Assembly (NCBI GenBank): GCA_002269645.1
Contig: NIVC01001379.1
Coordinates: forward strand, 1 to 64,000
Reading direction: 5' to 3'
DNA from: Macrostomum lignano
Lineage: Eukaryota
DNA length: 64,000 nucleotides
Below the pieces are notes generated by a model that was not told the DNA's origin, did no database searches, and worked only from the letters and a program-made list of their open reading frames with translations. This document shows, piece after piece, positions 4,292 through 64,000 of the stretch; the first letter of the stretch is position 1, and each line of letters starts with the position of its first letter. The translations under genes and the position numbers were made by a program.

Positions 4292-4326
<35 letters not shown>

Positions 4327-4343
4327 TAGACACTAAGACACTA

Positions 4344-4424
<81 letters not shown>

Positions 4425-4450
4425 GCAGACAGACAGACAGACAGACAGGC

Positions 4451-4499
<49 letters not shown>

Positions 4500-13716: not shown

Positions 13717-13768
13717 TTGTCACTAAATATGATTCTGATATGATCAATTTGTGTTCTATTTAAACTGG

Positions 13769-17837: not shown

Positions 17838-18504
17838 GATTGCTCAACTCATTGGAACACAAAAATCATTAATAAAAATTTTAATCAGTCTTCCAAGTCA
17901 TTCGTTGCATTCGTTCTCAATACTCGTAAAACACTATTATCGTATTTATTTAAGGTATGTACTCTTTTTGCTCACTATCCTACTGCTTATCTAGGCTTAA
18001 GTAGTGCTTCCAGCGTTTTTACAGAAATCTTCGCATTCAATGCCAAAACCTTGTCGCGAATTAAATTCAATTCCGTCCATTTTCTATGAAAATGTCGCCA
18101 CTTTGACTTGCAGCTGAGTTTGTCAACGAGTTTTGCCAAGTTATATTACATCTATATACATACTACCGATATTTTACATATATTTCTACCCTTGCATTTT
18201 CAATTTTTTATCACTGAAACCAATCTCAACATGTTAATAGACGAATCTTTTTATTTTAAATTTGTGCCACGTTTTTATATTTGTTTTATCGCCACTATTG
18301 CAGCCGTTTACAGAGAAAAATACACACATTTTTGCGGATCATTCAATACTTCGAATTGTTGCCATATTCAGTAATTGAGAGTGCCGTGTCCAACTATTTC
18401 TAAAACTGCCTTAACAGAAAATAATTTACTTGTACATAAAATGAAATGCAAGCTCTGTTGAAACTCTACCACTGTCTGTGTGCCCATCTTAAGCCTTGCT
18501 ATTC

Positions 18505-25733: not shown

Positions 25734-26020
25734 ATTACACCTGCTCTAATGAGCAGATGTGCAACCGATAGCTCAGCCGCAGCTATTGCGCGGCGCATTT
25801 GAAAGCTGCGTACGTCTGTTCAGTCCAAGGACTGGGGGGTCGCCACACACAGCCTCAATTACCCCAGCTAATGCTGGCACCCATTTTACAGCTGGGTGAA
25901 CTGAAGCAATGCAGAGTTAAGTGTCCTGCTCAAGGACACAATTTTTTCCAAGTGGGTCGAGAATCGAACCCCCGACCTTTCAGTTGTGAGTCCGACGCTC
26001 TGACCACTAGGCTACACCCC
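25734..26020 (-). mobile_element. tRNA-derived CORE-type SINE, most complete copy
   Basis: Minus strand reads A box TAGCCTAGTGG, B box GGTTCGATTC, then CCTTGAGCAGGACACTTAACTCTGCATTGCTTCAGTTCACCCAGCTGTAAAATGGG, similar to the MIR/CORE domain. Related copies at 33311 and 44114. Confidence 0.8.
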
Positions 26021-33310: not shown

Positions 33311-33525
33311 TAGTGTTTAGAGCGTCGGACCCAGACACCTAACCCTGCATTGCTTCAGTTCACCCAGCTGTAAAATTGGTGCTAGCATTAGCTGGGGTAA
33401 TTGAGGCTGTGTGTGGCGACCCCCCAGCCCTTGGACTGAACAGCCGTACGCAGCCTTCAGATGCGCCGCGCAATAGCTGCGGCTGAGCTGTCGGTTGCAC
33501 ATCTGGCCATTAGGGCAGGTGTAAT
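33311..33525 (+). mobile_element. CORE-SINE copy with internal deletion of most of the tRNA head
   Basis: TAGTGTTTAGAGCGTCGGAC joined directly to AGACACCTAACCCTGCATTGCTTCAGTTCACCCAGCTGTAAAA; the 3' body matches the 25.7-kb copy; followed by an ATT-rich tail. Confidence 0.78.
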
Positions 33526-38753: not shown

Positions 38754-41700
38754 ATGCATCTGGAACTCTATGAGCAGTCTCTCTACTCAGACTACGCCGC
38801 CTACAGGGCCCACAAGTGGCTCCTGTTCACAGCGCCGCCCGTCATCCTTCTACTCGGCACCGTCGGCAACCTGCTCAGCGTCTGCGGCCTCTGGGGCGGC
38901 GCTGGTGGCGGCCGGACCGGCAGCACCTTCGCCTACCTGATCCTACTGGCCTGCGCCGACCAGCTCACCCTCGTGGTCGGCCTGCTCCGTCGGTGGCTTC
39001 AGCAGGCGCGCGGCTGGCAGACCGAGACATTCAGCGACGCCGCCTGCGCGGCCACCCACACTCTGCTGACCGCCGCCTCCTACGCCTCGGTGCTGAGCCT
39101 GACGGCTGTCACTATGGAACGGGCGGCCATCGTTTGGCCCTGGCCGCGCGTGCGGGCCCGCCTGGCGAGCAGTCGGATCTGCGTGCCGGCGCTGCTGCTC
39201 ACCTGCCTGGCGCTCAGCAGCCACTGGCCGGTGCTGCTCCGGCTGCGCCGGGACCCGCTAGCGCCCGCTGCGACAAACGCCAGCAATGCCACCGCCTCGA
39301 CGACCGATGCTGACGCCGGCGAGGGCGACCTTCGCTGCGACGTCGACGACGAAGTTGGAGCCGGTTGGCTTCGCTCGCTGCTGGCCTGGCTGGACCTGAC
39401 GCTGTACTCGCTGCTGCCGCTGACCGCGATGCTGGCCTGCAACTGCATCATCCTGTGCCGCCTGCGGCGCTCCAAGCGCCTGCGCTACGGATCGATGGCT
39501 ATGAGGGCCTCGCAGGCCGAGGACAGGAGGGCCGCAGGTGAGCAGCTTCTTCTACCCCCCCCCCTGACAGGCTTTGACTGACTGTCTGATACAGGCTCTG
39601 ACTGTCTGATACAGGCTCTGACTGTCTGATACAGGCTCTGACTGTCTGATACAGGCTCTGACTGTCTGATACAGGCTCTGACTGTCTGATACAGGCTCTG
39701 ACTGTCTGATACAGGCTCTGACTGTCTGATACAGGCTCTGACTGTCTGATACAGGCTCGGACTGTCTGATACAGGCTCTGACTGTCTGATACAAGCTCTG
39801 ACTGTCTGATACAGGCTCTGACTGTCTGATACAGGCTCTGACTATCTGATACAGGCTCTGACTGTCTGATACAGGCTCTGACTGTCTGATACAGGCTCTG
39901 ACTGTCTGATACAAGCTCTGACTGTCTGATACAGGCTCTGACTGTCTGATACAGGCTCTGACTGTCTGATCCAGGCTCTGACTGTCTGATACAGGCTCTG
40001 ACTATCTGATACAGGCTCTGACTGTCTGATACAGGCTCTGACTGTCTGATACAAGCTCTGACTGTCTGATACAGGCTCTGACTGTCTGATACAGGCTCTG
40101 ACTGTCTGATACAGGCTCTGACTGTCTGATCCAGGCTCTGACTGTCTGATACAAGCTCTGACTGTCTGATACAGGCTCTGACTGTCTGATACAGGCTCTG
40201 ACTATCTGATACAGGCTCTGACTGTCTGATACAAGCTCTGACTGTCTGATACAGGCTCTGACTGTCTGATACAGGCTCTGACTATCTGATACAGGCTCTG
40301 ACTGTCTGATACAGGCTCTGACTGTCTGATACAGGCTTTGACCGACTGTCTGATACAGGCTTTGACCGACTGTCTGATACAGGCTTTGACCGACTGTCTG
40401 ATACAGGCTTTTACTGTCTGATACAGGCTTTTACTGTCTGATACAGGCTTTGACTGGCAGACTGTGACTGACAGTTCTATTGACTGTCTGTTTCTATATT
40501 CTGAGCTGCACGTATCCGGGGACCTTCATCTGAGAAACCTAAAGAAACAAAAAATCCAAGCAGTGGATTAAATTTTAATTCTTTTACTTTCAATTTTCCC
40601 GATTGAAAAAAACTCCAAATCCCCCAGCTTGCATCCTGTTTCCCAAATTTCCCAGTTGCCCAAGTCCGCCTTGCCGGCCTGCACGGCTTCTCCGCCCTCT
40701 CCAACAACATCGTACACAACAATGTCAGCGCCAATCCCCACGCCAAGAGTAGCAACGCCGTGCCGCTGCTGTCAGCGCCGGTGCCCCGGTCTGGCGGCGA
40801 AGCTTCGCTACACAGCGGGCGACGGCAGTACGAGAAGAGCGTGAGACAGGTGCGCGTTTGTGGGGCTTCGGTGACTTGGAGACCGTCTTCCATTGTACGA
40901 GTAGAGGGCATCTCGCTCCGTTTCACTCCTCAACCAAGATTAGTTATTTCTCCCTGATCGATGCTAACCCTTTGTATTGTTGCAGCCTCTGTCCTTCCTT
41001 GGACTCCCTGTCCTTAAACTATACATCCCTTTCCCTGATGCTCTATCGGGATGCTCTATCGCTCCACTTTTACAGCCACCTCACTCCGCGACCTTGAGCT
41101 ACGTATTCCTTTCCCCGATGCTCTATCGCTCTCACTTTTACAGCCACCTCACTCCGCGACCTTGAGCTACGTATTCCTTTCCCCGATGCTCTATCGCTCT
41201 CACTTTTACAGCCACCTCACTCCGCGACCTTGAATTATGCATCCCTTTCCCCTCATGCTCTATCGCTCCACTTTTACAGCCACCTCACTCCGCGACCTTG
41301 AATTATGCATCCCTTTCCCCTCATGCTCTATCGCTCCACTTTTACAGCCACCTCACTCCGCGACCTTGAATTATGCATCCCTTTCCCCTCATGCTCTATC
41401 GCTCTCACTTTTACAGCCACCTCACTCCGCGACCTTGAATTATGCATCCTTTTCCCTCATGCTCTATCGCTCTCACTTTTACAGCCACCTCACTCCGCGA
41501 CCTTGAATTATCCATCCCTTTCCCTCATGCTCTATCGCTCTCACTTTTACAGCCACCTCACTCCGCGACCTTGAATTATGCATCCTTTTCCCTCATGCTC
41601 TATCGCTCTCACTTTTACAGCCACCTCACTCCACGACCTTGAACTACGAATTCCTTTCCCCGATGCTCTACCGCTCTCACTTTTACAGCCACCTCACTCC

Positions 41701-44113: not shown

Positions 44114-44272
44114 TGGTTATAGCCTAGTCGTTAGAGCATGACTAAAAGGTCGGGGGTTCGATTCTCGACCAACTCGGAACAATTTGTGTCCAATTGAGCA
44201 AGACACTTAATTCTGCATTGCTTCAGTTCACCCAGCTGTAAAATGGGTGCCCGCATTAGCTGGGTAATTGAA
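44114..44272 (+). mobile_element. CORE-SINE copy, 3'-truncated
   Basis: TAGCCTAGTCG...GGGGTTCGATTCTCGACC...TTGAGCAAGACACTTAATTCTGCATTGCTTCAGTTCACCCAGCTGTAAAATGGGTGCC; ends at the start of a 32-bp minisatellite. Confidence 0.78.
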
Positions 44273-44279
44273 GGTGTCC

Positions 44280-49952: not shown

Positions 49953-52151
49953 GGTTGTCTCCATTGTACAGGATTTTTATTGCACCTACATCTAGTGGGA
50001 AACTAAACTAAATGACTTACGCATGTACACACCGTGCCTCTGTACCATTGGGTTGTGGGTGTAGCAATCGACGCGGGGCCCTTAAGCTCCAACCCCAAAT
50101 GCTTCGAAAGTCTTCAAACAGAGATTTAGGGGACAAAGAGAGATGGCGCATGCACGCTGCAGAAAAAGAACATTTCGGGCAAAGTTCGGCGTGAAATGTA
50201 TTCGTATGTAAGTAGGTAACCGCACTATGTAAGTAATTGTGAATGTACACTAATTAGTTTGATGTACATTATGCATGTAAATAGACAAGGGCACAGGGTG
50301 CAAGGCAGAATTGAGTACAACATCTTTCCCCTACAAGAATTTTCCAAGGAAATTAAAAAGGATGAAAGCGGCCTTTTAAATAGGCTATTGCATTCGCATG
50401 AATTGAATTTAAAGTTCGTTACTAGTCCATTCATTGCAACAACATGTTTCAATTATATGGGTCTCTGGATTTTATTGTCCTAAAGCAGAGGTCGGAAAAA
50501 TTTTTGCTTCAAGGGCCAGACAAAGAATCTTGATTATTGCTGCGGGCCAGGTGAGAGTGGAAAGGTGATGGAATGGGGGAGAGAAGAAAGAGGAGATGAC
50601 AGATGACGAAATAGAGGAGAAATGAGAGGCGAGATAAGATATAAGATAAGAGAGAAGAGGAGAGATGTGAGGAGAGAAGAAAGGAGAGAGATGGAAGGAG
50701 AGAAGAGAGGTGAGGAGATGAGAGGAGAGACGAGATGAGAGGAGAGCAGAGACGAGATGAGAGTAGAGGAGAGAGGAGAGTAGAGGAGAGAAAAGAGAGA
50801 AGAAAGGAGAGAGAAGACAGCTGAGAAGAGACACCAACCTATTGCCGGATTGCTATTTTCAAAGTTTCAAGTTCCAAAGGACCCGAGGGCCGGATTGAGA
50901 GGGCCGGAGTTTGCCGACCCCTGTCTTAAAGGTAATTGCGGACAGTGCAGATCGGTGATAGTAGCCTCATCGGGCTCCGCTGACCTTGCTGCAGCTGCTG
51001 CTACTAATTATCCAGTCTCTGGAATGCAGTGCTGGACCAGTTTCTTGAACAGCAAGAGACTGGTGCTGGCGCCGAGATTTGGGGTGCTGCCAGCAGTCTC
51101 GCAGCGCCTCACCGCAGGCGGCTCCTTGGGCGCTCGAGGAGCGGAGCGGCTTTTTTCTAGGAGCAGCTTCATGTCCTCCATGATGCGTCAGGCCTCTGTC
51201 ATGGATGCAGCTTGATGCGCTCGCGATCGACGCTGACGATCGTGACGAATTGGATGATGAATGCTTCCGAAGAGAATGGCCGACCGCTGCCGTTCATGAT
51301 TTGCTTCGAAGTCCCGAACACAGCGGACCGTTGACGGGTCCAATGGCATCGACACCGATGCTCGACCATGCCGACTTCGGTAGCGTAGATAGCGTCGGTT
51401 TGGCTGTTAAAACTTCTGTCTGATTGGTGGCTGAATGCGCGATCGAGTTGGTTGGTTGGGAGACTTACGGGGAGTGACTCTCCGGACACTCAAGTTCAGC
51501 TGCTTTGATTCCACCAGCGCTGCCAATTCTGCTGATGTGCATCTTCCTTTTCGGCTCAAATCGCAATACCCCGAATACCCCTGCAAGTTGCCCACCACTG
51601 CCAAGTCGATCATGTCCTTCGAGCCGAATTGAAGACACTGACCAGGAGCTTACAGCCCTGCCGGCAGTTTCCAGAGGCGACCGAGAGCCGAGTTCGAGGG
51701 AAGGATAAAGCCGCCTTGTTGGAAGCCCATGTGGCGTTTTAGCATGCAGTCTCGATCTCTTTTAAAAAGTTTTCGTGTCGATGACATTGCAGCTGGCGCA
51801 ACTGTCGACGAGGGCTTCCAGTCGCTTGCCGTTGATTGAGACTGTCAGTAGCGGCAGTTCGTCTTTGGTCAGACAGAACACCTCATCGTAAAAGTCGCTC
51901 GGTAGACTGCTGAAGCTCTCCGTGTTCTGTCGCCTTTGATCATTGAATTGAGGATGTGCACGCGCGGTCTCTTGAGTTTCGCTTGGACATGCAGGCCTTG
52001 GCAAGGTGTCCCGGTTTGTTGCAGATGCTGCATGTTTCTCTATACGGCAACGTGGGCACACTTAAGTATTGTGAATGTACAATAGTTTAATGTACAGTAT
52101 ACATATAGAATCGACAAGGGCGCAGGGCGCAAGGCATAATAGAGTACAACA
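49953..52151 (-). mobile_element. Degenerate LTR retrotransposon (Ty3/gypsy-like), heavily deleted
   Basis: Diverged direct repeats at ~50223-50322 and ~52040-52151, both starting TGTTGTACTC on the minus strand; purine tract AGGGGAAAGA immediately before the downstream LTR (50323-50332); remnants of gag Zn-knuckle (CPRCRIEKH), retropepsin (LEALVDSCASCNVI) and integrase start (LPKSAWSSIGVDAIGP). Left boundary approximate. Confidence 0.7.
50486..50923. mobile_element. hAT (Charlie-like) MITE nested in the LTR element
   Basis: 14-bp imperfect TIR CAGAGGTCGGAAAA / TTTGCCGACCCCTG; 8-bp TSD TCCTAAAG / TCTTAAAG (1 mismatch, central TA); subterminal GGGCC motifs; internal GA-rich tract; no ORF. Confidence 0.75.
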
Positions 52152-53738
52152 GTGGGCACCCTGGCCTTCGACGACGACATAGTCATGCCACCAGGGCTGA
52201 GGCAATTCTGCCCATTCTTCTGACTCCTGAGCGAATGCTAGCGCGAGGATACAGTACATGTACGCAGGCACGCACTGATCATATAAGGTGTACACAGTGG
52301 CCAGGCACATAAAAACACTCTCTCTGTTGCCTTGGGGACTGGCCCCTTCATAGGTGTGGGTCGCTCAAACTAGCTCGTACATGTACCAGCGAGCACAAGC
52401 TCTAAATGAATCCAGCCCAAACCAAAATTTGACCCTCGAAAAACTTCTTAGGCGCGCAAAATTCAGTTGTCGAGGCATGCACCGCGAGCAGAAGCCGTTA
52501 AAGAAATCTATTAAAAGTTACTTTTTGAAGCTCGTAATTATAATATTTGACGCTTCTTGGCTGGAATTTTTAGAATTCCAGCTGATGTCAATCAGCTAAT
52601 TTAATAAGCAGTTTCCGAATGTAATAATTGCTACTCTATGCAGGCCCATGTCGTAAGTCAAACCCATGCAGTTCGCTACAATATTGCAGTGCATAAAATG
52701 TACTTTTTAGTCTTGCAATCGAGGACTTTTTTAATAAGGACACAAAAAGTGACTCCTTTTTCTGATTTCAAAATCAGCGAATATCAATGGAAAATCGATA
52801 TTACGTACTAGCAAACAATAGTAATAGATGTACATGTAAAATTTTGCATTGTCAGCCAAATTCCTCAGATGCTAGGGTTTATTCTAAGGCATTTGAAGAC
52901 ACTTGATGAATTTACTCTTAACATTCATGATCCACAACATGTGTACACGATCTACTAGCTTTCTACTACAGATGTATGTTACATGCTTGTGTGCCTGCTC
53001 AGGGGAGTCGGCGGAATGGGCAGTAAAATTACTATCGGCCAACAGTTTTAGCAACGCCCAATTTTATTTTGGTTTTCAGAGTTGTGATATTTCGGGTTTG
53101 TGATGGCAAACCCCCCCCCCCGCAAATTTATAGTACGAGTAAAAACGGACCCCCACAACATGGACACATCTCTTTGTCTCTCTGCCACTCGGGAGCCACT
53201 TCCCACTGCAATAATCGAAGGCTTCGCTTTCAAGTCATTGCACCAGCCGTCAATATATGATTGAAGGGATTGATACTGCAATGATGACAAAACAAAACAT
53301 AACATGAAAACTTTATTAATGCATTATTGATAAAACCTGTTCTCTATATTCACCATCTTAGCATACGTTGGACTGCCAGGTAAATGAAACCAGGCATAGA
53401 AGAACTAAGATGGGAGCCAGCAGGCACACAGTACGAGGATGCAGGACCGAGTTCAAGACTTCAATGCCTGAATAACTAAGTAAGCCAGATAGGCACACAT
53501 GAACTGCTGAATTGCACAAACAAGAAAACGAAAGCAACCGGGGTTCACGAGCACATGTTTACAACAGAGTTTAAGCAGGAAAATGTCAGCAGTTCGTACT
53601 CCTGACGGGTAGTTTAAATAGAACTGACAATTCAACTGTTTCTCTGGTGACCTTCGACACAGACAATATTGAGAGTTTGTTTTACTTGATTCCATTTTTT
53701 TCTAAACAATTTTCTAAACCGATGCTCACACTATAGTC

Positions 53739-56700
53739 CTACTGCCGGCCGCCGTCATCCTGCTGACTCACCCGACGACGGAAACGCGGATCGAAGACGT
53801 CACGCCGAGCCGGAAGCTCTTCCCGCTGCTGCTGTTGTTGTTCAACAGCCGAAGCTGCCGATCGCTCGTTGAGCTGCAACCGACCGGATCTGCCACTCTG
53901 AGAACCCTCCGAATCCTGATGTTGTTGCTGATGGTGCTGGTTTCGAATCCTGGGATCTAGAAGCGACGAGGATTTTTGCGGTGGCGGCGGCGGCTGCTGC
54001 TGTTTGCCGGTCAGCCGAGGATCGTTTCCGGCGATACTTTCGGCGACAACGCTGCTAGGCAACTGCATCAGCGAGTACGGCAGCCGATCGATCGGGTCCA
54101 GGGGTAGAAGGCGCCAGGGCAGGCGGCGCTTGCAGATGGGCTGCAGAATTCGGATTGGCTTTCGTTTATTCTGACTTTTTATAATTTTTGAATAATTTTA
54201 TTGAAGTAATGGTCCTGTACATTTTCTTCTACTATGATGTAGTAGATTATGATTCTGAAGGTTTTAGGTCATTGTGTCAGATTTTGTATCATTTTGTAGG
54301 TTTAGTGGTCTGTATGTCACGTTTAGTGGTCCTTATGTCATGTTTAGCGGTCCATATTTTACGTTTAGTGGTCCTTATGTCACGTTTAGTGGTACTTATG
54401 TCATGTTTAGCGGTCCTTATTTCATGTTTAGTGGTCCTTATGTCATGTTTAGCGGTTCTTATTTCACGTTTAGTGGTCCTTATGTCATGTTTAGCGGTCC
54501 ATATTTTACGTTTAGTGGTCCTTATGTCATGTTTAGTGGTCCTTATGTCACGTTTAGTGGTCCTTATGTCATGTTTAGTGGTCCTTATGTCACGTTTAGT
54601 GGTCCTTATGTCATGTTTAGCGGTCCTTATTTCACGTTTAGTGGTTCTTATTTCACGTTTAGCGGTCCTTATGTGACGTTTAGTGGTCTGTATGTCAGGT
54701 TTCTGTTAATTTTGTAGGTTTAGTATCACTTAGTAGGTTTTTTGTGGCATTCTATGGGTTTTAAATCACTTAGTAGATTAATTAAGTGCACTTCCCACGT
54801 GGCAAAATGACTTAAAAAATTGCCCAAGAAAACGGTTACTAATGTTGCAGACTAGGGTGCCTCAGCTGTCTAAAACATATTTTAAAAGAATCATAAGTGC
54901 TTGTCTTGTCATGATAAAGCCAATTAAACACTTATACTATTTCAAGTGTCTTTAATACATTGTAAAGTGTAGAACTTCAAGTTTAATCATTTATGAGACA
55001 AGTACAATCAATAATTTTAAAGTGAGGGAGTGGTTGAACTCAAGTCACTGCCTCAAATCACGCAATATGCCCCTAATTGTATGAAGAGCTTATATTGGAA
55101 AAGTGTCAGAGGGGTGGGGTGAACAGGAGTACATTCGTGCAATGTTCACCTCTCCAGGTGCAACTGCGTCTATCCTAGTAGTGGTTCTAAATGAGTGCTC
55201 TTGCATAGTGCTTTAGCCCTAATCAATAAATTTTACTTTCAGTTTATTGATTTTCATTTTTAGTATATTGGATTGGCTTTAAAATGAGTTGATAAGGTGA
55301 GTTAGAGAAGCATTGGGTTAAATATTGTTAGTGTGACAAAGGTCAAGAAAATCAGCTCATACTCCTGAATTCTAGCTAAACTCTACGACCTATCTTCTAG
55401 AAAAGATAGTTGATTAAGCAATGCCCAACAGCTTGAAGTCCCATGACCAGTGCCAGCAGAGTGTATGTCTACTTTGTCTGCGAAAGGCTGAGCGCCGCCT
55501 GAATGACATCACAACTGTTGAGCAGTACGTCCTTCCGAATTATTCGTCTGTGCGGCATCTTCTGCCTGTTGGAGTCTGCGAGGGCTGCCGTCGAATTATT
55601 TCTTCGCTTGGAGGCCCAGCACCTCGGCCTTTGCCGCCCAGACTCAACTACGAGCAAATGCTAGCAGATCTGAGCAGCATTCCTGTGAGTCGAAGATCGC
55701 AACCAAACTGCCATTGCGAGATCTGCAAGATTGCCCGCAGCAACCTGCGCAAAAATGCAGATCCACACAGCACCTATGCAACTGGTACACTTAACTGCGC
55801 CAGAGGCCGTCCTTCAACTAGTGCAGATGCAGCCCAGGCTCCTTTGCGGCTCTGCTCTGGCTGCCACTCGCCCATCGGCAAGGGCAAGCCGCATCGCTGC
55901 AACAAAGCAACCCGGCTAGCAAATCTGAGCAGCTTGATCAGCCCTGGAACAGCAGAGCAAGTCGCTAGCACTACAGTTGCTGCCAAGCTGCAGGCCACCG
56001 GGGCAAGCACCGTTGCACTGAAAAGAGCGCAAGGAGGCAGACCTCTAGCTGTCACTGTGGCCAACACAGCCTGCAGCACACGACAGCTGGCTCCAACAAC
56101 AGCTAACACGATGCTTCGGCTGAAAGTTGCATTAAATCTCAGCAACCGGCAAACTCTGCAAGCGGCCAGCATTTTGCGAAAAGGAGCCGGCTCAGGGAAG
56201 GCTGTGCAGTCGAACTTGGGTGCAAGCCTCACTGCCAGAAGCCGGCATCTGAAAGACTTTTTTGTGAGCAAGCTGCTTGAAGTCGACAGCAAAGTGGCTA
56301 CCGCAAAAAACGCCGTGATCTGCAGTGATGTGCAAGGCCTGATTGAGAAGGTCGCTTCTGAGAGGGGCTACACGGATGTCGACGTAAAGCTTGGTCTTGA
56401 CGGAGGCGGTGGATTTTTTAAAATTTGTGCCAGCCTGCTGCATCGAGGTGATAGCCAAGAAAGTCAGTCGACAAAGGACCAGCTGTTTGCCGATTCTGGA
56501 GTAAAAAAGCTGTTGCTGCTAGCAGCTGTGCCAGACATGAGCGAGTGCTACAATAGCATCAAAGTTCTCTTTCAGCATTTGAGCCTTGGAGGAGTAACGG
56601 TGAATGCAGTAGCAGCTGACATGAAGGTTGCGAACCTCATCTGTGGCCTCCAGTCACATGCATCCAGGCATCCATGCTGCTATTGCGAGGCTCCTGTGCC

Positions 56701-59700
56701 ACTGAACACCTGTGGCCCGATGAGAACTGTTGGAAGAATACGACAGATGGCCGTGGACTTCGCCAGCAGCGGCAAAGAGAGAAGCAGTGCAAAGGATTTC
56801 TACAACTGCGTTGAGGCCCCTCTGCTTCAGGCAGACGATGAAGCCGAGATTCTGTTCGTTCTGCCTCCACCGGAGCTGCATCTGATGCTTGGCATCACGA
56901 ATCGCATCTTCGACGCATTGAACTCGGCGTGGGGCAACGACTGCGCGTATCAGTGGGCCCATGACCGCAGCATTGTGCGCGTTGGATACCGTGGCGGCAG
57001 CATGGAGGGAAACGCCTGCCGCACTCTGCTTCGCAAATCTGCAGAGCTTCATGAGTATCTGCCGCAGAACCTGAAGCCCTACGGTTCTTGTTTGATGCGT
57101 TTAGATTCCGTCGTCAGTAGCTGCTTCGGTTCCCAGCTGCATGCAGATTTCCAGCAGCACATTTTGCAGTTCAAGACTGCATTTGAGCTGCTTGGTCTGC
57201 CAATTTTCCCGAAAGTGCACGTGCTGCTGCACCACGTAGGAACCTTCTGTAGCGCCACTGGTAGCGCACTCGGCCTGTTTAGCGAACAATCCTTTGAGAG
57301 CGTGCACCGCGATTTCGCTCAAACTTGGCAGAGATTTGCTGTGCCCACGCAGCACAGCAAATTCCCAGACGCGTTGCTCTCAGCTGTCATTGCATACAAC
57401 AGCTTTCACATTTGACAATTTACTTGTAGCTTAGTTTCAAATTCCTTTTGTCTTTACTGTACGAACTTAACTTGTTCTTTGTTGAATTTCATTTAGTATT
57501 GCTTATTCTTCTACTATTTCTTAAAAATTTGTGGCCTAAATTTCAGCTTTATTTTGTTTAAATTCGCATTAATTTTTTCTTACATTTTTTCTGCTTAATG
57601 TTAATTTAATATATATTGCTCTTAGTTGGCTCTGCTTAATAGAAAAGGCCGTTAGAATAAAAATTACTATATCATGACAAGACAAGCACTTACGATTCTT
57701 TTAAAATATGTTTTAGACAGCTGAGGCACCCTAGTTTGCAACATTAGTAACCGTTTTCTTGGGCAATTTTTTAAGTCATTTTGCCACGTGGGAAGCACCG
57801 TGAGTGGTATATGATTTAGATTACGGTATTATTCCCCATATTTATTTAACATAAAGAAATTAGTCAACCAAGCCAAAAATGTTTTTGAAAAAGTATTGAT
57901 TTTCTAAAATAACTAATTAAAATAATTCCCTAATAAATTAGCAACCAGAATCTCACAGGAGCCCGGAAGACCAGAGCAGTCTGGCGAGAGCTGGCTGCAC
58001 TTTTGTCGTCAGAATCCCAGCCGGAGCCCCGCTGCTGTTCCATTGGCTCCGAATCTTCCACAACCTCTTCTTTGCAGACAGCCTGAAGCGATGTTTAGCA
58101 AGAAAACCTCATGTGATAACTTTAGCCAAATAGAACATTAAATATGGAAATATGACAAATAGAAAAAAAGTCTACTCAGATAAGAGTCCACTGGTCTGCT
58201 CAGGTCAGGTAGGAATCTACTAGCTTGATCAGGTAAGAGTCCACTGGTTTGATCAGATAAGAATTTACTAGTTTGATCGGGTAAGAGTCCACTGGTTTGA
58301 TCAGATAAGAATCTACTAGTTTGATCAGGTAAGAGTCCACTGGTTTGATCAGGTAGGAATCTACTAGCTTGATCAGGTAAGAGTCCACTGGTTTGACCAG
58401 ATAAGAATCTACTAGTTTGATCAGGTAAGAGTCCATTGGTTTGATCAGGTAAGAATCTACTAGTTTGATCAGGTAAGAGTCCATTGGTTTGGTCAGGTAA
58501 GAATCTACTAGTTTGATCAGGTAAGAGTCCATTGGTTTGATCAGGTAGGAATCTACTAGCTTGATCAGGTAAGAGTCCACTGGTTTGACCAGATAAGAAT
58601 CTACTAGTTTGATCAGGTAAGAGTCCACTGGTTTGATCAGATAAGAATCTACTAGCTTGATCAGGTAAGAGTCCACTGGTTTGATCAGATAAGAATCTAC
58701 TAGCTTGATCAGGTAAGAGTCCACTGGTTTGATCAGGTAGGAATCTACTAGCTTGATCAGGTAAGAGTCCACTGGTTTGACCAGATAAGAATCTACTAGT
58801 TTGATCAGGTAAGAGTCCATTGGTTTGATCAGGTAAGAATCTACTAGTTTGATCAGGTAAGAGTCCATTGGTTTGGTCAGGTAAGAATCTACTAGTTTGA
58901 TCAGGTAAGAGTCCATTGGTTTGATCAGGTAGGAATCTACTAGCTTGATCAGGTAAGAGTCCACTGGTTTGACCAGATAAGAATCTACTAGTTTGATCAG
59001 GTAAGAGTCCACTGGTTTGATCAGATAAGAATCTACTAGCTTGATCAGGTAAGAGTCCACTGGTTTGATCAGATAAGAATCTACTAGCTTGATCAGGTAA
59101 GAGTCCAATGGTTTGATCAGATAAGAATCTACTAGTTTGATCAGGTAAGAGTCCACTGGTTTGATCAGATAAGAATCTACTAGTTTGATCAGGTAAGAGT
59201 CCACTGGTTTGATCAGGTAAGAATCTACTAGCTTGATCAGGTAAGAGTCCACTGGTTTGACCAGATAAGAATCTACTAGTTTGATCAGATAAGAGTCCAC
59301 TGGTCTGCTCAGGTCAGGTAAGAATCTACTAGCTTGATCAGGTAAGAGTCCAATGGTTTGATCAGGCAAGAATCTACTAGTTTGATCAGGTAAGAGTCCA
59401 CTGGTTTGATCAGATAAGAATCTACTAGTTTGATCAGGTAAGAGTCCACTGGTTTGATCAGATAAGAATCTACTAGTTTGATCAGGTAAGAGTCCACTGG
59501 TTTGATCAGATAAGAATCTACTAGTTTGATCAGGTAAGAGTCCACTGGTTTGATCAGATAAGAATCTACTAGTTTGATCAGGTAAGAGTCCACTGGTTTG
59601 ATCAGGCAAGAATCTACTAGTTTGATCAGGTAAGAGTCCACTGGCCTGCTAAAACCTGCTGAAGCGTCACTCACCATCGTGGGAGACTGGGCAGATGCCT

Positions 59701-60854
59701 CAGTGTCTTCTGTTCCGCCCCCAGAGCCGCTGCTGCCAGTGCAGAACTCGCTCAGCAGGCTGGCCACAGCGTCCAGGGCGCGAGAAGCGGCTGCCACCGC
59801 TACAGGCGTCGGCTTCGTCGGCGGCAGCATCGGTGGCCGCGGCGGCGGCAGCGGCGGGTTGCGCGGTTGCAGCCGAGGCGGCGCAGAGGGGAACGGCCGC
59901 GCCGGCGGCTCCGGGCCAGAATAGGCCGGTCGCGTGAGAGACAAGCTGTAAAAAGCAGGTGTTGATGGCGGTTTGTGGCAATAAGTAGCCAATAAAATAG
60001 CGAAGCATTTACTGAGACATTTACTGGCTTATCAGAGGGAGAGAGAGAGGGAGAGAGGGAGAGAAAGAGGGAAAGAGAGGGAGAGAGGAAGGAGAGAGAG
60101 ACATTTACTGGCCAATCAGAGAGAGACATTTACTGGCCAATCAGAGAAAGAGAGGGAGAGAGGGGGAAAGAAAGAGGGAAAGTGAGAGAGAGAGAGTGAG
60201 AGCGAGGCTTTTACTGGCCAATCGGAGAGCGAGGCATTTACTGGCCAATCAGAGAGCGAGGTAAATACTGGCCAATCAGAGAGCAAGGCAAATACTGGCC
60301 AATCAGAGAGCAATGCAAATACTGGCCAATCAGAGAGCAAGGCAAATACTGGTCAATCAGAAAGTGAAGCAGTTACTGGCCAATCAGAGCGCTAGGCAAA
60401 TACTGGCCAATCAGAGAGCAAGAATTTGATTTCCATAGATTGCAAGAAAAAATGATGAAGTGAATTTTGCTATGCAGAGAAACAAGGCTGAAAGCCGCTT
60501 TATTCATAACGATTCGGTTTTCTTATGAAATCAAGTAAAAGTTTATTTCAGACTTAGCTAATTACCCTCCGCTAGAGGACGCAGGTGGAGGCAGAAGCGG
60601 CGGGCGATGCTGTTGAGGTAGAGGAAGCTGCAGAGCAGCAGGCGCGGTTTGATTCTCCGCATCGCCAGGATGCGGAAACGGCCGAGGTGGGAAATGCAAC
60701 TGTTTGAAAGGCTGCTGGTGCTCCTGCTTCATCTCCGGCTGGAGGCAATGCGGATGCTGCTGATGAACGAGAGTTAGGCGCGACTCAGAATTCACATGTT
60801 CATCTTCTGGATGCTCTTGGCCAGATTGTAGCCGTGGCAGATGTGGAGCTGGAC
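53739..60854 (-). CDS. 3' part of a Pro/Gln/His-rich protein with three DPR motifs (possibly ZC3H4/ZC3H6/Su(s)-like or another nuclear RNA-processing factor); 5' exons not identified
   Basis: Minus-strand exons 60854-60566, 59945-59675, 58082-57957, 54140-53739 have AG/GT boundaries and compatible phases (1/2/0/0), are stop-free and end in TAG. Last exon contains GNDPRL, LLDPRI, VFDPRF. Family guess is weak. Confidence 0.6.
54300..54700. repeat. 21-bp minisatellite (GTTTAGTGGTCCTTATGTCA(C/T))n
   Basis: Direct reading. Confidence 0.93.
54789..57802 (+). mobile_element. DNA transposon, Chapaev-like (CMC/Transib-RAG1-related DDE), 3014 bp, inserted antisense in an intron of the minus-strand gene
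   Basis: Left TIR 54789-54916 and right TIR 57670-57802 are reverse complements with 2 mismatches plus a 5-nt deletion near the left tip; termini CAC...GTG; AGTG on both flanks (54785-54788, 57803-57806) = 4-bp TSD; single intact ORF inside. Confidence 0.88.
55421..57415 (+). CDS. DDE transposase, 664 aa, with N-terminal Cys/His (Chapa-like) domain
   Basis: Uninterrupted ORF inside the TIRs. N-terminal H-x7-C-x2-C ... PVGVCEGC ... CHCEIC; core VKLGLDGGGGFFK (D), AADMK (D), HPCCYC, PPPELHLMLG, GGSMEGNAC, PKVHVLLHH, LGLFSEQSFESVH (E). Confidence 0.88.
   Translation: MPNSLKSHDQCQQSVCLLCLRKAERRLNDITTVEQYVLPNYSSVRHLLPVGVCEGCRRIISSLGGPAPRPLPPRLNYEQMLADLSSIPVSRRSQPNCHCEICKIARSNLRKNADPHSTYATGTLNCARGRPSTSADAAQAPLRLCSGCHSPIGKGKPHRCNKATRLANLSSLISPGTAEQVASTTVAAKLQATGASTVALKRAQGGRPLAVTVANTACSTRQLAPTTANTMLRLKVALNLSNRQTLQAASILRKGAGSGKAVQSNLGASLTARSRHLKDFFVSKLLEVDSKVATAKNAVICSDVQGLIEKVASERGYTDVDVKLGLDGGGGFFKICASLLHRGDSQESQSTKDQLFADSGVKKLLLLAAVPDMSECYNSIKVLFQHLSLGGVTVNAVAADMKVANLICGLQSHASRHPCCYCEAPVPLNTCGPMRTVGRIRQMAVDFASSGKERSSAKDFYNCVEAPLLQADDEAEILFVLPPPELHLMLGITNRIFDALNSAWGNDCAYQWAHDRSIVRVGYRGGSMEGNACRTLLRKSAELHEYLPQNLKPYGSCLMRLDSVVSSCFGSQLHADFQQHILQFKTAFELLGLPIFPKVHVLLHHVGTFCSATGSALGLFSEQSFESVHRDFAQTWQRFAVPTQHSKFPDALLSAVIAYNSFHI
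58185..59645. repeat. 24-bp units alternating as a 48-bp dimer (GATCAGGTAAGAGTCCACTGGTTT / GATCAGATAAGAATCTACTAGTTT), intron of the minus-strand gene
   Basis: Direct reading; source of the DSYLIKPV/DSYLIKLV pseudo-ORF. Confidence 0.96.
60020..60420. repeat. GA-rich tract plus ~30-bp repeat (TACTGGCCAATCAGAGAGC) containing CCAAT in each unit
   Basis: Direct reading. Confidence 0.88.
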
Positions 60855-60895
60855 CTGGGATGTGAGAAGCATGAGATCAGTTCGAGATGAGTGAT

Positions 60896-61120
<225 letters not shown>

Positions 61121-61125
61121 AATAT

Positions 61126-63324
61126 CTCGCTTCGCTCGCTCTTTCTCGCTATCTACCATCTATTGCCAGGACCTGCACCGGAGCGGTTACGAAAATTAGA
61201 TTTCTCGGTAGTTGCTCGCACTCTTTTGCACTACTTGAGTAGTCTGATTTTCGTTCGGCAGCTGGTTCCAGCAGGTAGTTCCTCTGGATAAAAGCGCTTA
61301 CCGCGCCCATTGGCTTTCCAGCTGCCTTAATCGTTTCCGGTGATCTTGTGTGCGTGCATTCAGCTTGATTGGCTGCGGCAAGCAAGCTCGAAAGAGCTCG
61401 CTTCGCTCGCTCTTTCTCGCTATCTACCATCTATTGCCAGGACCTGCACCGGAGCGGTTACGAAAATTAGATTTCTCGGTAGTTGCTCGCACTCTTTTGC
61501 ACTACTTGAGTAGTCTGATTTTCGTTCGGCAGCTGGTTCCAGCAGGTAGTTCCTCTGGATAAAAGCGCTTACCGCGCCCATTGGCTTTCCAGCTGCCTTA
61601 ATCGTTTCCGGTGATCTTGTGTGCGTGCATTCAGCTTGATTGGCTGCGGCAAGCAAGCTCGAAAGAGCTCGCTTCGCTCGCTCTTTCTCGCTATCTACCA
61701 TCTATTGCCAGGACCTGCACCGGAGCGGTTACGAAAATTAGATTTCTCGGTAGTTGCTCGCACTCTTTTGCACTACTTGAGTAGTCTGATTTTCGTTCGG
61801 CAGCTGGTTCCAGCAGGTAGTTCCTCTGGATAAAAGCGCTTACCGCGCCCATTGGCTTTCCAGCTGCCTTAATCGTTTCCGGTGATCTTGTGTGCGTGCA
61901 TTCAGCTTGATTGGCTGCGGCAAGCAAGCTCGAAAGAGCTCGCTTCGCTCGCTCTTTCTCGCTATCTACCATCTATTGCCAGGACCTGCACCGGAGCGGT
62001 TACGAAAATTAGATTTCTCGGTAGTTGCTCGCACTCTTTTGCACTACTTGAGTAGTCTGATTTTCGTTCGGCAGCTGGTTCCAGCAGGTAGTTCCTCTGG
62101 ATAAAAGCGCTTACCGCGCCCATTGGCTTTCCAGCTGCCTTAATCGTTTCCGGTGATCTTGTGTGCGTGCATTCAGCTTGATTGGCTGCGGCAAGCAAGC
62201 TCGAAAGAGCTCGCTTCGCTCGCTCTTTCTCGCTATCTACCATCTATTGCCAGGACCTGCACCGGAGCGGTTACGAAAATTAGATTTCTCGGTAGTTGCT
62301 CGCACTCTTTTGCACTACTTGAGTAGTCTGATTTTCGTTCGGCAGCTGGTTCCAGCAGGTAGTTCCTCTGGATAAAAGCGCTTACCGCGCCCATTGGCTT
62401 TCCAGCTGCCTTAATCGTTTCCGGTGATCTTGTGTGCGTGCATTCAGCTTGATTGGCTGCGGCAAGCAAGCTCGAAAGAGCTCGCTTCGCTCGCTCTTTC
62501 TCGCTATCTACCATCTATTGCCAGGACCTGCACCGGAGCGGTTACGAAAATTAGATTTCTCGGTAGTTGCTCGCACTCTTTTGCACTACTTGAGTAGTCT
62601 GATTTTCGTTCGGCAGCTGGTTCCAGCAGGTAGTTCCTCTGGATAAAAGCGCTTACCGCGCCCATTGGCTTTCCAGCTGCCTTAATCGTTTCCGGTGATC
62701 TTGTGTGCGTGCATTCAGCTTGATTGGCTGCGGCAAGCAAGCTCGAAAGAGCTCGCTTCGCTCGCTCTTTCTCGCTATCTACCATCTATTGCCAGGACCT
62801 GCACCGGAGCGGTTACGAAAATTAGATTTCTCGGTAGTTGCTCGCACTCTTTTGCACTACTTGAGTAGTCTGATTTTCGTTCGGCAGCTGGTTCCAGCAG
62901 GTAGTTCCTCTGGATAAAAGCGCTTACCGCGCCCATTGGCTTTCCAGCTGCCTTAATCGTTTCCGGTGATCTTGTGTGCGTGCATTCAGCTTGATTGGCT
63001 GCGGCAAGCAAGCTCGAAAGAGCTCGCTTCGCTCGCTCTTTCTCGCTATCTACCATCTATTGCCAGGACCTGCACCGGAGCGGTTACGAAAATTAGATTT
63101 CTCGGTAGTTGCTCGCACTCTTTTGCACTACTTGAGTAGTCTGATTTTCGTTCGGCAGCTGGTTCCAGCAGGTAGTTCCTCTGGATAAAAGCGCTTACCG
63201 CGCCCATTGGCTTTCCAGCTGCCTTAATCGTTTCCGGTGATCTTGTGTGCGTGCATTCAGCTTGATTGGCTGCGGCAAGCAAGCTCGAAAGAGCTCGCTT
63301 CGCTCGCTCTTTCTCGCTATCTAC
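61126..63324. repeat. Tandem array of 8 apparently identical 271-bp units plus a 31-bp partial unit
   Basis: Units start at 61126, 61397, 61668, 61939, 62210, 62481, 62752, 63023; identical ORFs recur every 271 bp; flanked on both sides by (TATC)n. Confidence 0.97.
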
Positions 63325-63386
63325 TATCTATCTATCTATCTATCTATCTACAATATCTATCTATCTATCTATCTATCTATCTACAA

Positions 63387-63455
<69 letters not shown>

Positions 63456-63465
63456 CTATCTATAT
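63325..63465. repeat. (TATC)n microsatellite, right flank of the 271-bp array
   Basis: Direct reading. Confidence 0.97.
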
Positions 63466-63559
63466 ATATATATCCGCTGGAATAGTAGTTTACTAGCCAA
63501 TCCCAACCCCCGTTGGGGCTTTCCGTCCAAACTCCAACCACAGTTTTCCCCATCCACAA

Positions 63560-63960
63560 AATCCCCGATGCAAAGAATCTCACATGCAAAGAATCCCCCA
63601 TCCAAAGAACCCCTATCGATAGAATCACCGATCCGAAGAATTCCCCATTCAATGAATCCCCTACTCAAGAAATTCCCGATCTACAGAAGCCCCCTATCTA
63701 AAGAATCCCCATCCAAAGAATCTCTCATCCACAGAATCCCCATCCAAAGAATCCCTCATCCACAGAATCCAAATACCCTGGTATAAAGAATCCTCCATCC
63801 ATCCCTATCCAAAGAATTTCCTCATTCATTCCTATCCAAAGAATTTCCTCATTCATTCCTACCTAAAGAATCCCCCATCCATCCATATCCAAAGAATCCC
63901 CCCCAATTAATCCCCGTCCAAATAATTCACATCATAATCCCCATCTAAATAAACCATAGA
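63560..63960. repeat. Degenerate (AAGAATCCCCATCC)-like repeat
   Basis: Direct reading. Confidence 0.75.
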
Positions 63961-64000
63961 TCTCCCATCTAAATAATCCGCCATCAAAGAAATAATTGGC

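What the first reader, a model, noticed from the sequence alone, without database searches (positions are those of the whole stretch)
54785..57806. Young, ORF-intact Chapaev/RAG1-related transposon with RSS-like ends
Seen: 3014-bp element, ~130-bp TIRs differing at only 2 positions, AGTG 4-bp TSD, one uninterrupted 664-aa ORF. The intact (right) end reads CACGGTG, then a 12-bp spacer, then CAAAATGAC, loosely like the RSS heptamer (CACAGTG) plus A-rich nonamer. Established: Transib, RAG1 and Chapaev transposases share the DDE fold with C-x2-C/H-x3-H zinc ligands; Chapaev has CAC...GTG termini, 4-bp TSDs and an N-terminal Cys/His domain similar to the RAG1 N-terminus. Here H-x7-C-x2-C...C-x2-C...CxC-x2-C is present. 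Inference: a recently active member of the RAG1-related group in a probable flatworm, combining a RAG1-N-like domain with RSS-like ends.
Basis: partly seen in the sequence, partly recalled or inferred. Interest (0 to 1): 0.8.

Follow-up and report, generated by a model that had tools for sequence, protein, structure and literature searches.

The report
Intact Chapaev transposon, RAG1/Transib-related
This is a 3-kb cut-and-paste DNA transposon of the known Chapaev group, whose enzyme has the same fold as the RAG1 recombinase that assembles antibody genes. It is a new member of a known kind, and its ends are built like the recombination signals RAG1 recognises.

Summary
Window 54789-57802 is a 3014-bp element with 129-nt inverted ends (2-3 mismatches), AGTG on both flanks, and one intact 664-aa ORF.

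- Two AlphaFold models hit only RAG1, ProtoRAG RAG1L and HzTransib in the PDB (E down to 1e-11). The next hit is noise.
- A 77-sequence family profile finds only RAG1/RAG1L by sequence (E 2.7e-4).
- The N-terminus matches the published Chapa zinc-finger domain of Repbase Chapaev-2_HM and Chapaev-1_AA (73 and 52 bits).
- Chapaev hallmarks are present: CAC...GTG tips, a 4-bp TSD (perfect in 12 of 14 complete copies), and the C(2)C, LH and H(4)H motifs.

Three corrections.
Across 13 related ends the conserved parts are CACrG, a variable spacer of about 23 bp, and an A-run followed by TGmCC. This is the Transib/RSS-23 layout, and it is the same at both ends.
- The left tip has lost 5 nt, so this copy may be immobile.
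- "Young" cannot be read from TIR identity.

It is a new member of a known kind, in a likely Macrostomum genome.

The parts
54785..54788 (.). Left target-site duplication, AGTG
   Evidence: Identical to 57803-57806. Twelve of 14 complete copies of related elements have perfect 4-bp duplications, never 5 bp.
54789..54919 (+). Left terminal inverted repeat. The tip is CAC followed directly by TTCCC, so about 5 nt (GGTGC) are missing relative to the right end.
   Evidence: Inverted-repeat arm 54791-54919. Tip alignment.
54814..54825 (+). Left copy of the conserved subterminal A-rich box, AAAAAATTGCCC
   Evidence: AAAATTGCC is found at 54816-54824 and 57762-57770. The box is conserved at positions 31-43 from the tip in 13 related ends.
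55421..57415 (+). Transposase ORF, 664 aa, single exon, intact
   Evidence: It keeps the family residue at 66 of 69 highly conserved columns. AlphaFold pLDDT is 91.4. Foldseek returns RAG1/Transib only.
55442..55726 (+). Chapa zinc-finger domain (aa 8-102; H8, C16, C19, C53, C56, C97, C99, C102)
   Evidence: The family profile scores 72.6, 51.9, 43.4 and 43.0 bits against the published N-termini of Chapaev-2_HM, -1_AA, -5_HM and -1_HM (sequences from PMC4411706 Additional file 5).
55802..55813 (+). AT-hook-like RGRP (aa 128-131) in a disordered linker
   Evidence: GRP is the majority residue in 77 homologues. pLDDT is below 50 for aa 125-138. Its role in reading the A-run is inferred only.
56033..56044 (+). 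GGRP motif (aa 205-208)
   Evidence: P208 is invariant in the 12 closest homologues; G..P is the majority in 77. It recalls the RAG1 GGRPR motif, but no equivalence was shown.
56399..56401 (+). D327, first catalytic Asp (motif GLDGGGG, end of strand 320-329)
   Evidence: Invariant in 77 sequences. Secondary structure. Compare RAG1 CDGMGD (D600). The assignment rests on motif and fold, not on a residue-level alignment.
56618..56620 (+). D400, second catalytic Asp
   Evidence: Aligned with RAG1 D708 by HMMER and by hhalign.
56675..56686 (+). C419-x2-C422 zinc ligands, 19 residues after D400 as in RAG1 (D708 to C727)
   Evidence: Invariant. Aligned with RAG1 C727/C730.
57218..57235 (+). H600-x4-H605 zinc ligands
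   Evidence: Aligned with RAG1 H937/H942 and with HzTransib.
57284..57298 (+). E622...E626 (SEQSFES). One of the two is the catalytic Glu.
   Evidence: E626 is invariant and E622 is at least 90% conserved. The helix aligns with RAG1 SEGNES, which holds E962, but the register is ambiguous.
57761..57772 (-). Right copy of the conserved A-rich box (positions 31-42 from the tip)
57667..57802 (-). Right terminal inverted repeat with an intact tip. The heptamer CACGGTG (57796-57802, read on the minus strand) is followed by 23 nt and then AAAAAATTG.
57803..57806 (.). Right target-site duplication, AGTG

Best explanation
This is a single-gene, autonomous-type DNA transposon of the Chapaev group. Kapitonov & Koonin (2015) place that group in the Transib superfamily; Yuan & Wessler (2011) place it in CMC.

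**Protein layout.** The 664-aa transposase has four parts in order:
- an N-terminal Chapa zinc finger;
- a disordered linker carrying an AT-hook-like RGRP;
- a small CCHC knuckle;
- a RAG1/Transib-type core. The core is an RNase-H fold carrying D327 and D400, a large helical insertion holding a C2H2 zinc site (C419, C422, H600, H605), and the third acidic residue on the SEQxxES helix.

**Likely mechanism (inferred from RAG1 and HzTransib, not shown here).**
1. The transposase recognises each end through two conserved blocks: the CACrG tip, and an A-run followed by TGmCC about 23 bp further in.
2. It pairs the two ends and nicks at the CAC boundary.
3. It releases the element through a hairpin on the flanking DNA.
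4. It inserts with a 4-bp stagger, which produces the AGTG duplication.

**State of this copy.** The gene is intact, but the left tip has lost about 5 nt. The copy may therefore be poorly mobile or immobile on its own, while still able to supply transposase to other copies.
For: **Shown**
- Element anatomy.
- Fold. Two models (pLDDT 78.5 and 91.4) were searched against the PDB. With the better model all 40 hits at E <= 1e-3 are RAG1 (best 1.3e-11), BbRAGL 6b40 (3.5e-7) or HzTransib (5.8e-7), and the next hit is at E 0.13.
- Sequence. The 77-member profile finds only RAG1/RAG1L in the PDB (E 2.7e-4 to 9e-3). It aligns the second Asp, CxxC, LH, GN and HxxxxH. hhalign against the verified mouse RAG1 core gives E 1.1e-4.
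- Chapa domain. It scores 72.6 and 51.9 bits against published Repbase Chapaev-2_HM and Chapaev-1_AA, against 21.9 for Chapaev3-1_SM and 7.8 for human RAG1.
- TSD. It is a perfect 4 bp in 12 of 14 complete copies: the window, five M. lignano copies of one family, a second M. lignano family, and metagenome loci.
- Tips. They are CAC in 13 of 13 families, and G at position 5 in 13 of 13.
- Conserved box. Five columns in positions 8-48 are at least 12/13 identical, all in the A-run/CC box. The expectation is 0.01 columns, and 0 of 5000 shuffles or circular shifts reach the observed value.
- Mobility of the family. Five 3457-bp M. lignano copies at different sites differ by only 1-12 nt.

**Definitions used**
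- Chapaev hallmarks: PMC4079192.
- Chapa domain and the clades of the Transib superfamily: PMC4411706.
Against: - No Pfam family and no single-sequence PDB hit support the assignment.
- Repbase/RepeatPeps were not available, so the DDE core was not placed in a tree with named Chapaev, Mirage, CACTA and Transib references.
- No CACTA or Mirage structure has been solved. Foldseek therefore cannot say whether RAG1/Transib is closer than those groups.
- The register of the catalytic Glu is unresolved: gapless alignments put RAG1 E962 opposite Q623.
- The 13 ends are not independent. L028, L029, L040 and L048 share spacer sequence, and so do L008 and L009.
- Two copies lack a perfect TSD. L004 matches at 3 of 4 positions. 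L009, a short-read metagenome contig, matches at none.
- Hairpin chemistry and binding of the A-rich box are inferred.
Confidence: 0.9

Rival explanations
1. It is a canonical Transib, or a RAG-like (ProtoRAG/TransibSU) transposon, rather than a Chapaev.
For: - The closest solved folds are RAG1, BbRAGL and HzTransib.
- The ends follow the Transib consensus layout: heptamer, 23-bp spacer, A-rich nonamer (consensus CACAATG-N23-AAAAAAATC in PMC1131882).
Against: - The TSD is 4 bp and never 5 bp.
- The N-terminal domain matches Chapaev fragments far better than RAG1 or sea-urchin RAG1L (73 bits against 8-13 bits).
- Canonical Transib has no Chapa domain (PMC4411706).
- There is no second, RAG2-like ORF and no RING finger.
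- Sequence similarity to HzTransib is only E 0.35.
Confidence: 0.04
2. The resemblance of the ends to recombination signals is convergent or trivial. Any transposase-binding site could sit about 30 bp from a CAC tip. It would then not be inherited from the common ancestor with Transib and RSS.
For: - Only CAC, G5 and an A-run are shared, which is low information.
- Both ends are of the 23 type, so the 12/23 rule is absent.
- The RAG1 nonamer-binding domain is not needed for the structural match. Chains lacking it align as well or better (TMt 0.53-0.56 against 0.46-0.52).
- Outside the A-run the box reads TGmCC, unlike the RSS nonamer.
Against: - The same offset (A-run ending at position 35-37) is kept across families whose spacers share only 36% identity.
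- That offset coincides with the Transib consensus, whose nonamer starts at position 31.
- The transposases themselves are homologous.
Confidence: 0.3
3. This copy is a dead relic and is no longer mobile, despite its open reading frame.
For: - The left tip lacks about 5 nt, so the A-box sits 18 nt rather than 23 nt from CAC.
- The ORF departs from the family at three highly conserved columns: Q12, S379 and F596.
- There is no second copy in the window.
Against: - The ORF is full length, and 66 of 69 conserved columns are kept, including all catalytic and zinc residues.
- The TIRs are otherwise 98% matched.
- The tip gap could be an assembly error.
Confidence: 0.45
4. It belongs to another DDE superfamily, such as CACTA/Mirage, P, hAT or Kolobok.
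For: - Yuan & Wessler group Chapaev with CACTA and Mirage.
- One homologue each gives weak Pfam hits to the nematode families DUF1280 and DUF1258 (E 1e-3 and 0.1).
Against: - No Transposase_21/DUF4218 or other transposase Pfam hit was found.
With the better model no P element chain is listed at all and Hermes is at 0.47.
- The TSD is 4 bp, not 2, 3 or 8 bp.
- The element is not inserted at TTAA.
Confidence: 0.03

Closest known systems
RING-less Chapaev elements of Repbase (Chapaev-1/2/5_HM of Hydra, Chapaev-1_AA of Aedes)
   Same: - The N-terminal Chapa zinc finger has the same spacing and motifs (HEENR..VC.LCL.K, TRS...C.C.IC, then GRP). It scores 43-73 bits.
- There is no RING finger.
- The tips are CAC...GTG.
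- The TSD is 4 bp, within the 3-4 bp quoted for Chapaev (PMC4079192).
   Different: - The host is a flatworm.
- Only the published N-terminal fragments could be compared. Core identity and tree position are unknown.
- Whether those elements carry the same A-rich box 23 bp from the tip could not be checked.
Transib transposons (for example HzTransib, PDB 6pqn/6pqx)
   Same: - The RAG1-type core fold matches (Foldseek E 5.8e-7).
- The zinc site (CxxC with HxxxxH) and the VH..L.H....SE..SE..DF motif are shared.
- The ends are built as heptamer, 23-bp spacer, A-rich nonamer.
   Different: - Transib makes 5-bp, GC-rich TSDs and has no Chapa domain.
- Here the TSD is 4 bp with no obvious target consensus.
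- The TIRs here are long (129 nt), against about 38 nt in Transib.
RAG1 and the ProtoRAG RAG1L (PDB 6cg0, 6b40)
   Same: - These are the best structural matches (E 1e-11, about 560-580 aligned columns).
- D708, C727/C730 and H937/H942 have aligned equivalents.
- RAG1 also has a Chapa-like N-terminus (PMC4411706).
   Different: - There is no RAG2-like partner gene and no RING finger.
- No nonamer-binding domain could be demonstrated.
- The TSD is 4 bp, not 5 bp.
- Sequence identity is only 12-14%.
Chapaev3 (Merrow, Garfield, Conan; Chapaev3-1_SM of the planarian Schmidtea)
   Same: - The C(2)C, LH and H(4)H motifs are shared.
- It has a Chapa-type N-terminus (21.9 bits for Chapaev3-1_SM).
   Different: Chapaev3 makes a 3-bp TWA duplication between A and T (PMC4079192). 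That pattern is not seen in any copy here.

Membership tests
Chapaev | TIRs ending 5'-CAC ... GTG-3' | tested here: met
   The right tip is CACGGTG and the left tip keeps CAC. CAC is present in 13 of 13 related families.
Chapaev | 3-4 bp target-site duplication | tested here: met
   AGTG lies on both flanks of the window element. Twelve of 14 complete copies have a perfect 4-bp TSD and none has 5 bp.
Chapaev | Transposase motifs C(2)C, LH and H(4)H | tested here: met
   C419-x2-C422, L486-H487 and H600-x4-H605 are invariant or at least 90% conserved in 77 sequences.
Chapaev | N-terminal Chapa zinc-finger domain | tested here: met
   The family profile was scored against published Chapaev N-termini: 72.6, 51.9, 43.4 and 43.0 bits (sequences, which contain OCR errors).
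Chapaev | DDE core clusters with Repbase Chapaev transposases in a phylogeny | not testable with these tools
   No Repbase/RepeatPeps core sequences were available. Only the N-terminal fragments were published in the open literature I could reach.
Transib superfamily / RAG1-like core | RAG1-type fold: an RNase-H domain with a large helical insertion and a C2H2 zinc site | tested here: met
   Foldseek returned only RAG1, BbRAGL and HzTransib at E <= 1e-3 with two models. Profile and HH alignments agree.
Transib (canonical) | 5-bp target-site duplication | tested here: not met
   In every copy with a clean TSD the 5-bp reading fails.
Transib (canonical) | No N-terminal domain beyond the core | tested here: not met
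   A Chapa domain is present at aa 8-102.
RAG-like transposon (ProtoRAG/TransibSU) | Adjacent RAG2-like gene inside the element | tested here: not met
   Only one sense ORF of 80 aa or more lies between the TIRs. The other ORFs are antisense within it.
RSS-like signal | Heptamer CACxxxx plus an A-rich nonamer at a fixed spacer | tested here: met
   CACrGtk, then a 22-24 nt variable spacer, then an A-run (positions 32-36 are at least 11/13 A). No shuffle out of 5000 reaches the observed conservation.
RSS-like signal | 12/23 asymmetry between the two ends | tested here: not met
   Both ends of every complete copy carry the same 23-type spacing. The window's 12-nt reading (CAAAATGAC) is not conserved.
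CACTA/EnSpm, Mirage | Transposase_21/DUF4218-type core; 3-bp or 2-bp TSD | tested here: not met
   These families give no Pfam hit in 12 members. The TSD is 4 bp.

The most novel reading that the evidence does not exclude
The bipartite end signal is kept, at the same offset, in a Chapaev lineage that makes 4-bp TSDs and carries the RAG1-like Chapa N-terminus. The signal is a CAC heptamer, a spacer of about 23 bp, and an A-rich nonamer. If this is inherited, the signal architecture behind RSSs predates the Chapaev/Transib split. The A-run may then be read by an AT-hook-like GRP motif upstream of the core, a possible forerunner of the GGRPR motif in RAG1's nonamer-binding domain. I found no open paper that describes Chapaev ends in these terms. 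I also found none with biochemistry on a Chapaev transposase.
Probability: 0.4. Interest if true: 0.55.

Novelty: new member of a known kind. Interest (0 to 1): 0.38.

Why it matters
Chapaev elements are the least studied branch of the transposon group that gave rise to RAG1. They are the only transposons that share RAG1's N-terminal zinc-finger region.

An intact gene with defined ends would let three questions be tested directly:
- how the Chapa domain and the A-rich box contribute to end recognition;
- whether cleavage goes through a hairpin, as with RAG and Transib;
- what sets a 4-bp stagger rather than a 5-bp one.

The near-identical multi-copy relative in Macrostomum lignano is the better starting point. 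M. lignano is a laboratory flatworm, so an active endogenous element there could also become a genetic tool.

As a genome annotation this is an ordinary transposon insertion in repeat-rich DNA.

Tried and rejected
- **Pfam.** The scan of the ORF gave only a sub-threshold DUF6001 hit. The scan of 12 homologues gave scattered weak hits (AprA_N, zf-AD, DUF1280, DUF1258) that I judged uninformative.
- **Single-sequence PDB search.** It returned nothing.
- **Exact look-up of the window protein.** It is not on record, so other copies from the source genome could not be fetched.
- **Second homologue search, with the 77-sequence profile.** It returned the same 11 proteins.
- **Third homologue search, with the window's GPCR-like ORF, to identify the organism.** It found nothing.
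- **Cluster look-up of ten representatives.** It gave no names or taxa.
- **Metagenome scan.** It failed with the 77-sequence alignment and worked with the 12-sequence alignment.
- **Metagenome contigs.** Many start or end inside the TIR, so they gave no tip or TSD (L010, L011, L013-L016, L022, L033). L008 is flanked by Nextera adapter and L009 has no TSD. I treated both as assembly artefacts.
I rejected it as a family feature.
- **Equivalence of GGRP (aa 205-208) with the RAG1 nonamer-binding domain.** I considered it and could not support it. RAG1 chains without that domain match equally well. Only a non-significant HMM segment links aa 231-262 to RAG1 residues 469-500.
- **Extra copies of the A-box inside the element.** There are none.

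Full report
**1. What is in the sequence**

- Window 54789-57802 is a 3014-bp element.
- Its arms 54791-54919 and 57667-57795 form a 129-nt inverted repeat that is 98% complementary. There are two mismatches in the first 126 nt and a third at the inner edge.
- The 23-nt subterminal sequence occurs nowhere else in the 64-kb window, against 0 expected by chance.
- AGTG lies directly outside both ends, at 54785-54788 and 57803-57806.
- Between the repeats there is one sense ORF, 55421-57415, of 664 aa. All other ORFs of 80 aa or more in the element are antisense inside it.
- The coding part is about 55% G+C and the non-coding parts about 35%.
- The two tips differ. Read inward, the right end is CACGGTGCTTCCC... 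and the left end is CACTTCCC.... The left tip therefore lacks about 5 nt. An alternative gap placement exists, but it loses both the CAC and the flank match.
- The element sits between two minisatellite arrays, 54300-54702 and 58205-59644.

**2. Relatives**

- The ORF has no Pfam family and no direct PDB match.
- A word-indexed search found 11 homologues. The best are three Macrostomum lignano proteins (48-50% identity, full length). The rest come from unnamed ENA, JGI and Logan assemblies.
- A full HMMER scan with a profile of these found 9564 cluster representatives at E <= 1e-3 and 1445 at E <= 1e-30. This is a large, widespread family.
- In a 77-sequence alignment the invariant residues are C16, C19, C53, C99, C102, D327, E375, K402, G409, C419, C422, L486, H487, G530, L617, E626 and H629.
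- H8, C56, C97, C145, C148, H158, C160, D400, H600, H605 and E622 are at least 90% conserved.
- The window ORF keeps the family residue at 66 of 69 highly conserved columns. The exceptions are Q12, S379 and F596.

**3. The core is RAG1/Transib-like**

Structure:
- AlphaFold2 gave pLDDT 78.5 with 12 sequences and pLDDT 91.4, pTM 0.72, with 77 sequences.
- Foldseek against the PDB gave the same answer for both models.
- With the better model all 40 hits at E <= 1e-3 belong to three groups: RAG1 (best 1.3e-11, about 560-580 aligned columns, TM about 0.5), amphioxus RAG1L 6b40 (3.5e-7) and HzTransib (5.8e-7).
- The next hit is hexokinase at E 0.13. Hermes is at 0.47.

Sequence:
- The 77-member profile finds only RAG1 and RAG1L chains in the PDB (E 2.7e-4 to 9e-3).
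- hhalign against the mouse RAG1 core gives E 1.1e-4. I had verified that core as 100% identical to PDB 9jpu residues 384-1010.
- These alignments pair the following residues:

| This ORF | Mouse RAG1 |
|---|---|
| D400 | D708 |
| C419-x2-C422 | C727-x2-C730 (19 residues after the Asp in both) |
| L486-H487 | the ALHCD motif |
| G530-N531 | NGN |
| H600-x4-H605 | H937-x4-H942 |
| SEQSFES | SEGNES (holds E962) |

- The register on that last helix is ambiguous, so the catalytic Glu is either E622 or E626.
- D327 lies in GLDGGGG at the end of strand 320-329. It is placed by motif (compare RAG1 CDGMGD, D600) and by secondary structure, not by a residue-level alignment.
- No CACTA or Mirage structure has been solved. 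The structural result therefore cannot rank RAG1/Transib against those groups.

**4. It is a Chapaev**

- Zhang et al. (PMC4079192) give the hallmarks: a 3-4 bp TSD, invariable CAC...GTG termini, and the C(2)C, LH and H(4)H motifs. All are present here.
- Kapitonov & Koonin (PMC4411706) define the Chapa domain. It is a complex N-terminal zinc finger shared by Chapaev, Chapaev3, TransibSU and RAG1. They place Chapaev inside the Transib superfamily.
- I took the N-terminal fragments printed in their Additional file 5 and scored them with the family profile:

| Reference fragment | Bits |
|---|---|
| Chapaev-2_HM | 72.6 |
| Chapaev-1_AA | 51.9 |
| Chapaev-5_HM | 43.4 |
| Chapaev-1_HM | 43.0 |
| Chapaev3-1_SM | 21.9 |
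| sea-urchin RAG1L | 13.5 |
| human RAG1 | 7.8 |
| RING-bearing Chapaevs of amphioxus, Nematostella and Hydra | about 0 |

- The element therefore belongs to the RING-less Chapaev subgroup already catalogued in Hydra and Aedes.
- Chapaev3 is excluded by its 3-bp TWA duplication. Canonical Transib is excluded by its 5-bp duplication and its lack of a Chapa domain. RAG-like transposons are excluded by the absence of a RAG2-like gene and a RING finger.

**5. Target-site duplication in the family**

- I fetched five M. lignano loci that encode the identical protein P0001. I also fetched a second M. lignano family, an ENA contig and 44 metagenome loci.
- Fourteen copies have both ends. Twelve carry a perfect 4-bp duplication: AGTG, ATCT, TTGC, AACC, CTCG, GAGC, TGAA, CACC, TTAT, ACGA, GACT and TGGT.
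- One copy matches at 3 of 4 positions (L004). One short-read contig does not match at all (L009).
- A 5-bp reading fails in every case. No target consensus is apparent.

**6. The ends**

- I anchored thirteen family ends at the tip without gaps.
- Conserved positions are C1, A2, C3 and G5 (13 of 13), then A at positions 32-36 (11-13 of 13; positions 34 and 35 are invariant), and then T/G and CC around positions 38-42.
- Positions 8-30 share only 36% pairwise identity, against 69% for positions 31-43.
- Five columns in positions 8-48 reach at least 12/13 identity. The expectation is 0.01, and none of 5000 shuffles or circular shifts reaches the observed value.
- The layout is therefore CACrGtk, a variable spacer of 22-24 nt, and AAAAAAWTG followed by CC.
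- This is the layout Kapitonov & Jurka reported for Transib (CACAATG-N23-AAAAAAATC) and compared with RSS-23 (PMC1131882).
It lies inside what is the variable spacer in the relatives, so the 12-nt reading is not a family feature.
- Both ends of every copy carry the same spacing. There is no 12/23 asymmetry.
- In the window's damaged left end the box lies 18 nt from CAC rather than 23 nt.
- Caveat: several of the thirteen ends are related to one another (L028, L029, L040 and L048; L008 and L009).

**7. Age and activity**

- TIR identity cannot date this copy. In the M. lignano relative the TIR mismatches at positions 77 and 197 are present in every copy, so they are family traits.
- That relative is clearly recent. 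Five 3457-bp copies at different sites differ by only 1-12 nt and have no indels.
- For the window element I can say only that the gene is intact, the right end is intact and the left tip is damaged.

**8. Host**

- The window contains a rhodopsin-type GPCR-like ORF (Pfam E 2.4e-13), so it is from an animal.
- It shares non-coding interspersed repeats with the roughly 60 kb of M. lignano sequence that I had fetched, at 86-89% identity.
- Like that genome, it is dense with minisatellites.
- Macrostomum or a close relative is therefore likely but not proven.

**9. Mechanism**

Shown:
- the element's anatomy;
- the 4-bp duplication;
- the fold and motif homology;
- the conserved bipartite ends.

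Inferred from RAG1 and HzTransib:
- binding of the two conserved blocks;
- pairing of the ends;
- nicking at the CAC boundary;
- hairpin formation on the flank;
- insertion with a 4-bp stagger.

Speculative:
- The AT-hook-like RGRP (aa 128-131, in a disordered linker) or the GGRP (aa 205-208) may read the A-run.
- RAG1 chains that lack the nonamer-binding domain match the model just as well. I therefore could not show a homologue of that domain.

**10. Verdict**

- The element is a new member of a known group, not a new kind of system.
- The modestly new point is that Chapaev ends share the Transib/RSS-23 architecture. I found no open paper stating this. I found no biochemistry on any Chapaev transposase.

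Noticed in passing
window 2310-47390 and 50632-63976: The window is unusually dense in long minisatellite arrays. Examples are 6758-10900 (17 bp x 243), 13766-17839 (22 bp x 185), 3437-4681 ((AGAC)n), 58205-59644 (48 bp x 30) and 61126-63331 (271 bp x 8). These arrays explain the long stop-free ORFs in several frames, such as 6470-11045 and 58200-59609, which are not genes.
   Followed up: partly
window 24100-24538; 25843-26035; 33333-33416; 44140-44277: Non-coding interspersed repeats here are shared at 86-89% identity with Macrostomum lignano loci (L006 2967-3426 and L004 8010-8206). The L006 segment is a MITE-like unit of about 480 bp with 47-nt inverted ends. This suggests the window comes from Macrostomum or a close relative.
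   Followed up: partly
window 38754-39578 (+): A 275-aa ORF matches the rhodopsin-family 7TM receptor domain (Pfam 7tm_1, E 2.4e-13). It is wedged between two tandem-repeat arrays. The word-indexed protein search found no homologue.
   Followed up: partly
L001-L005 (M. lignano GCA_002269645.1), element at 3417-6873 in each: A related 3457-bp Chapaev family has about 230-nt TIRs. Five copies at different sites encode an identical 680-aa protein and differ by only 1-12 nt. This family was evidently active very recently and is a better candidate for experiments than the window copy.
   Followed up: yes
L007 6826-7854: A Tc1/mariner-type transposase gene (HTH_Tnp_Tc3_2 plus DDE_3) lies about 450 bp beyond the right end of the Chapaev copy on this ENA contig. 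It has its own inverted repeats at 6386-6421 and 8101-8136.
   Followed up: no
L008 40-58 and 3360-3378: The metagenome contig carries the Nextera/Tn5 mosaic-end adapter (AGATGTGTATAAGAGACAG) on both sides of the element and truncates its right end. This is an untrimmed-adapter assembly artefact in a public record.
   Followed up: no
window ORF aa 145-160 (55853-55900): A small additional C-x2-C-x9-H-x-C knuckle (C145, C148, H158, C160) lies between the Chapa domain and the core. It is at least 90% conserved in 77 homologues and is not part of the published Chapa alignment. Its function is unknown.
   Followed up: no
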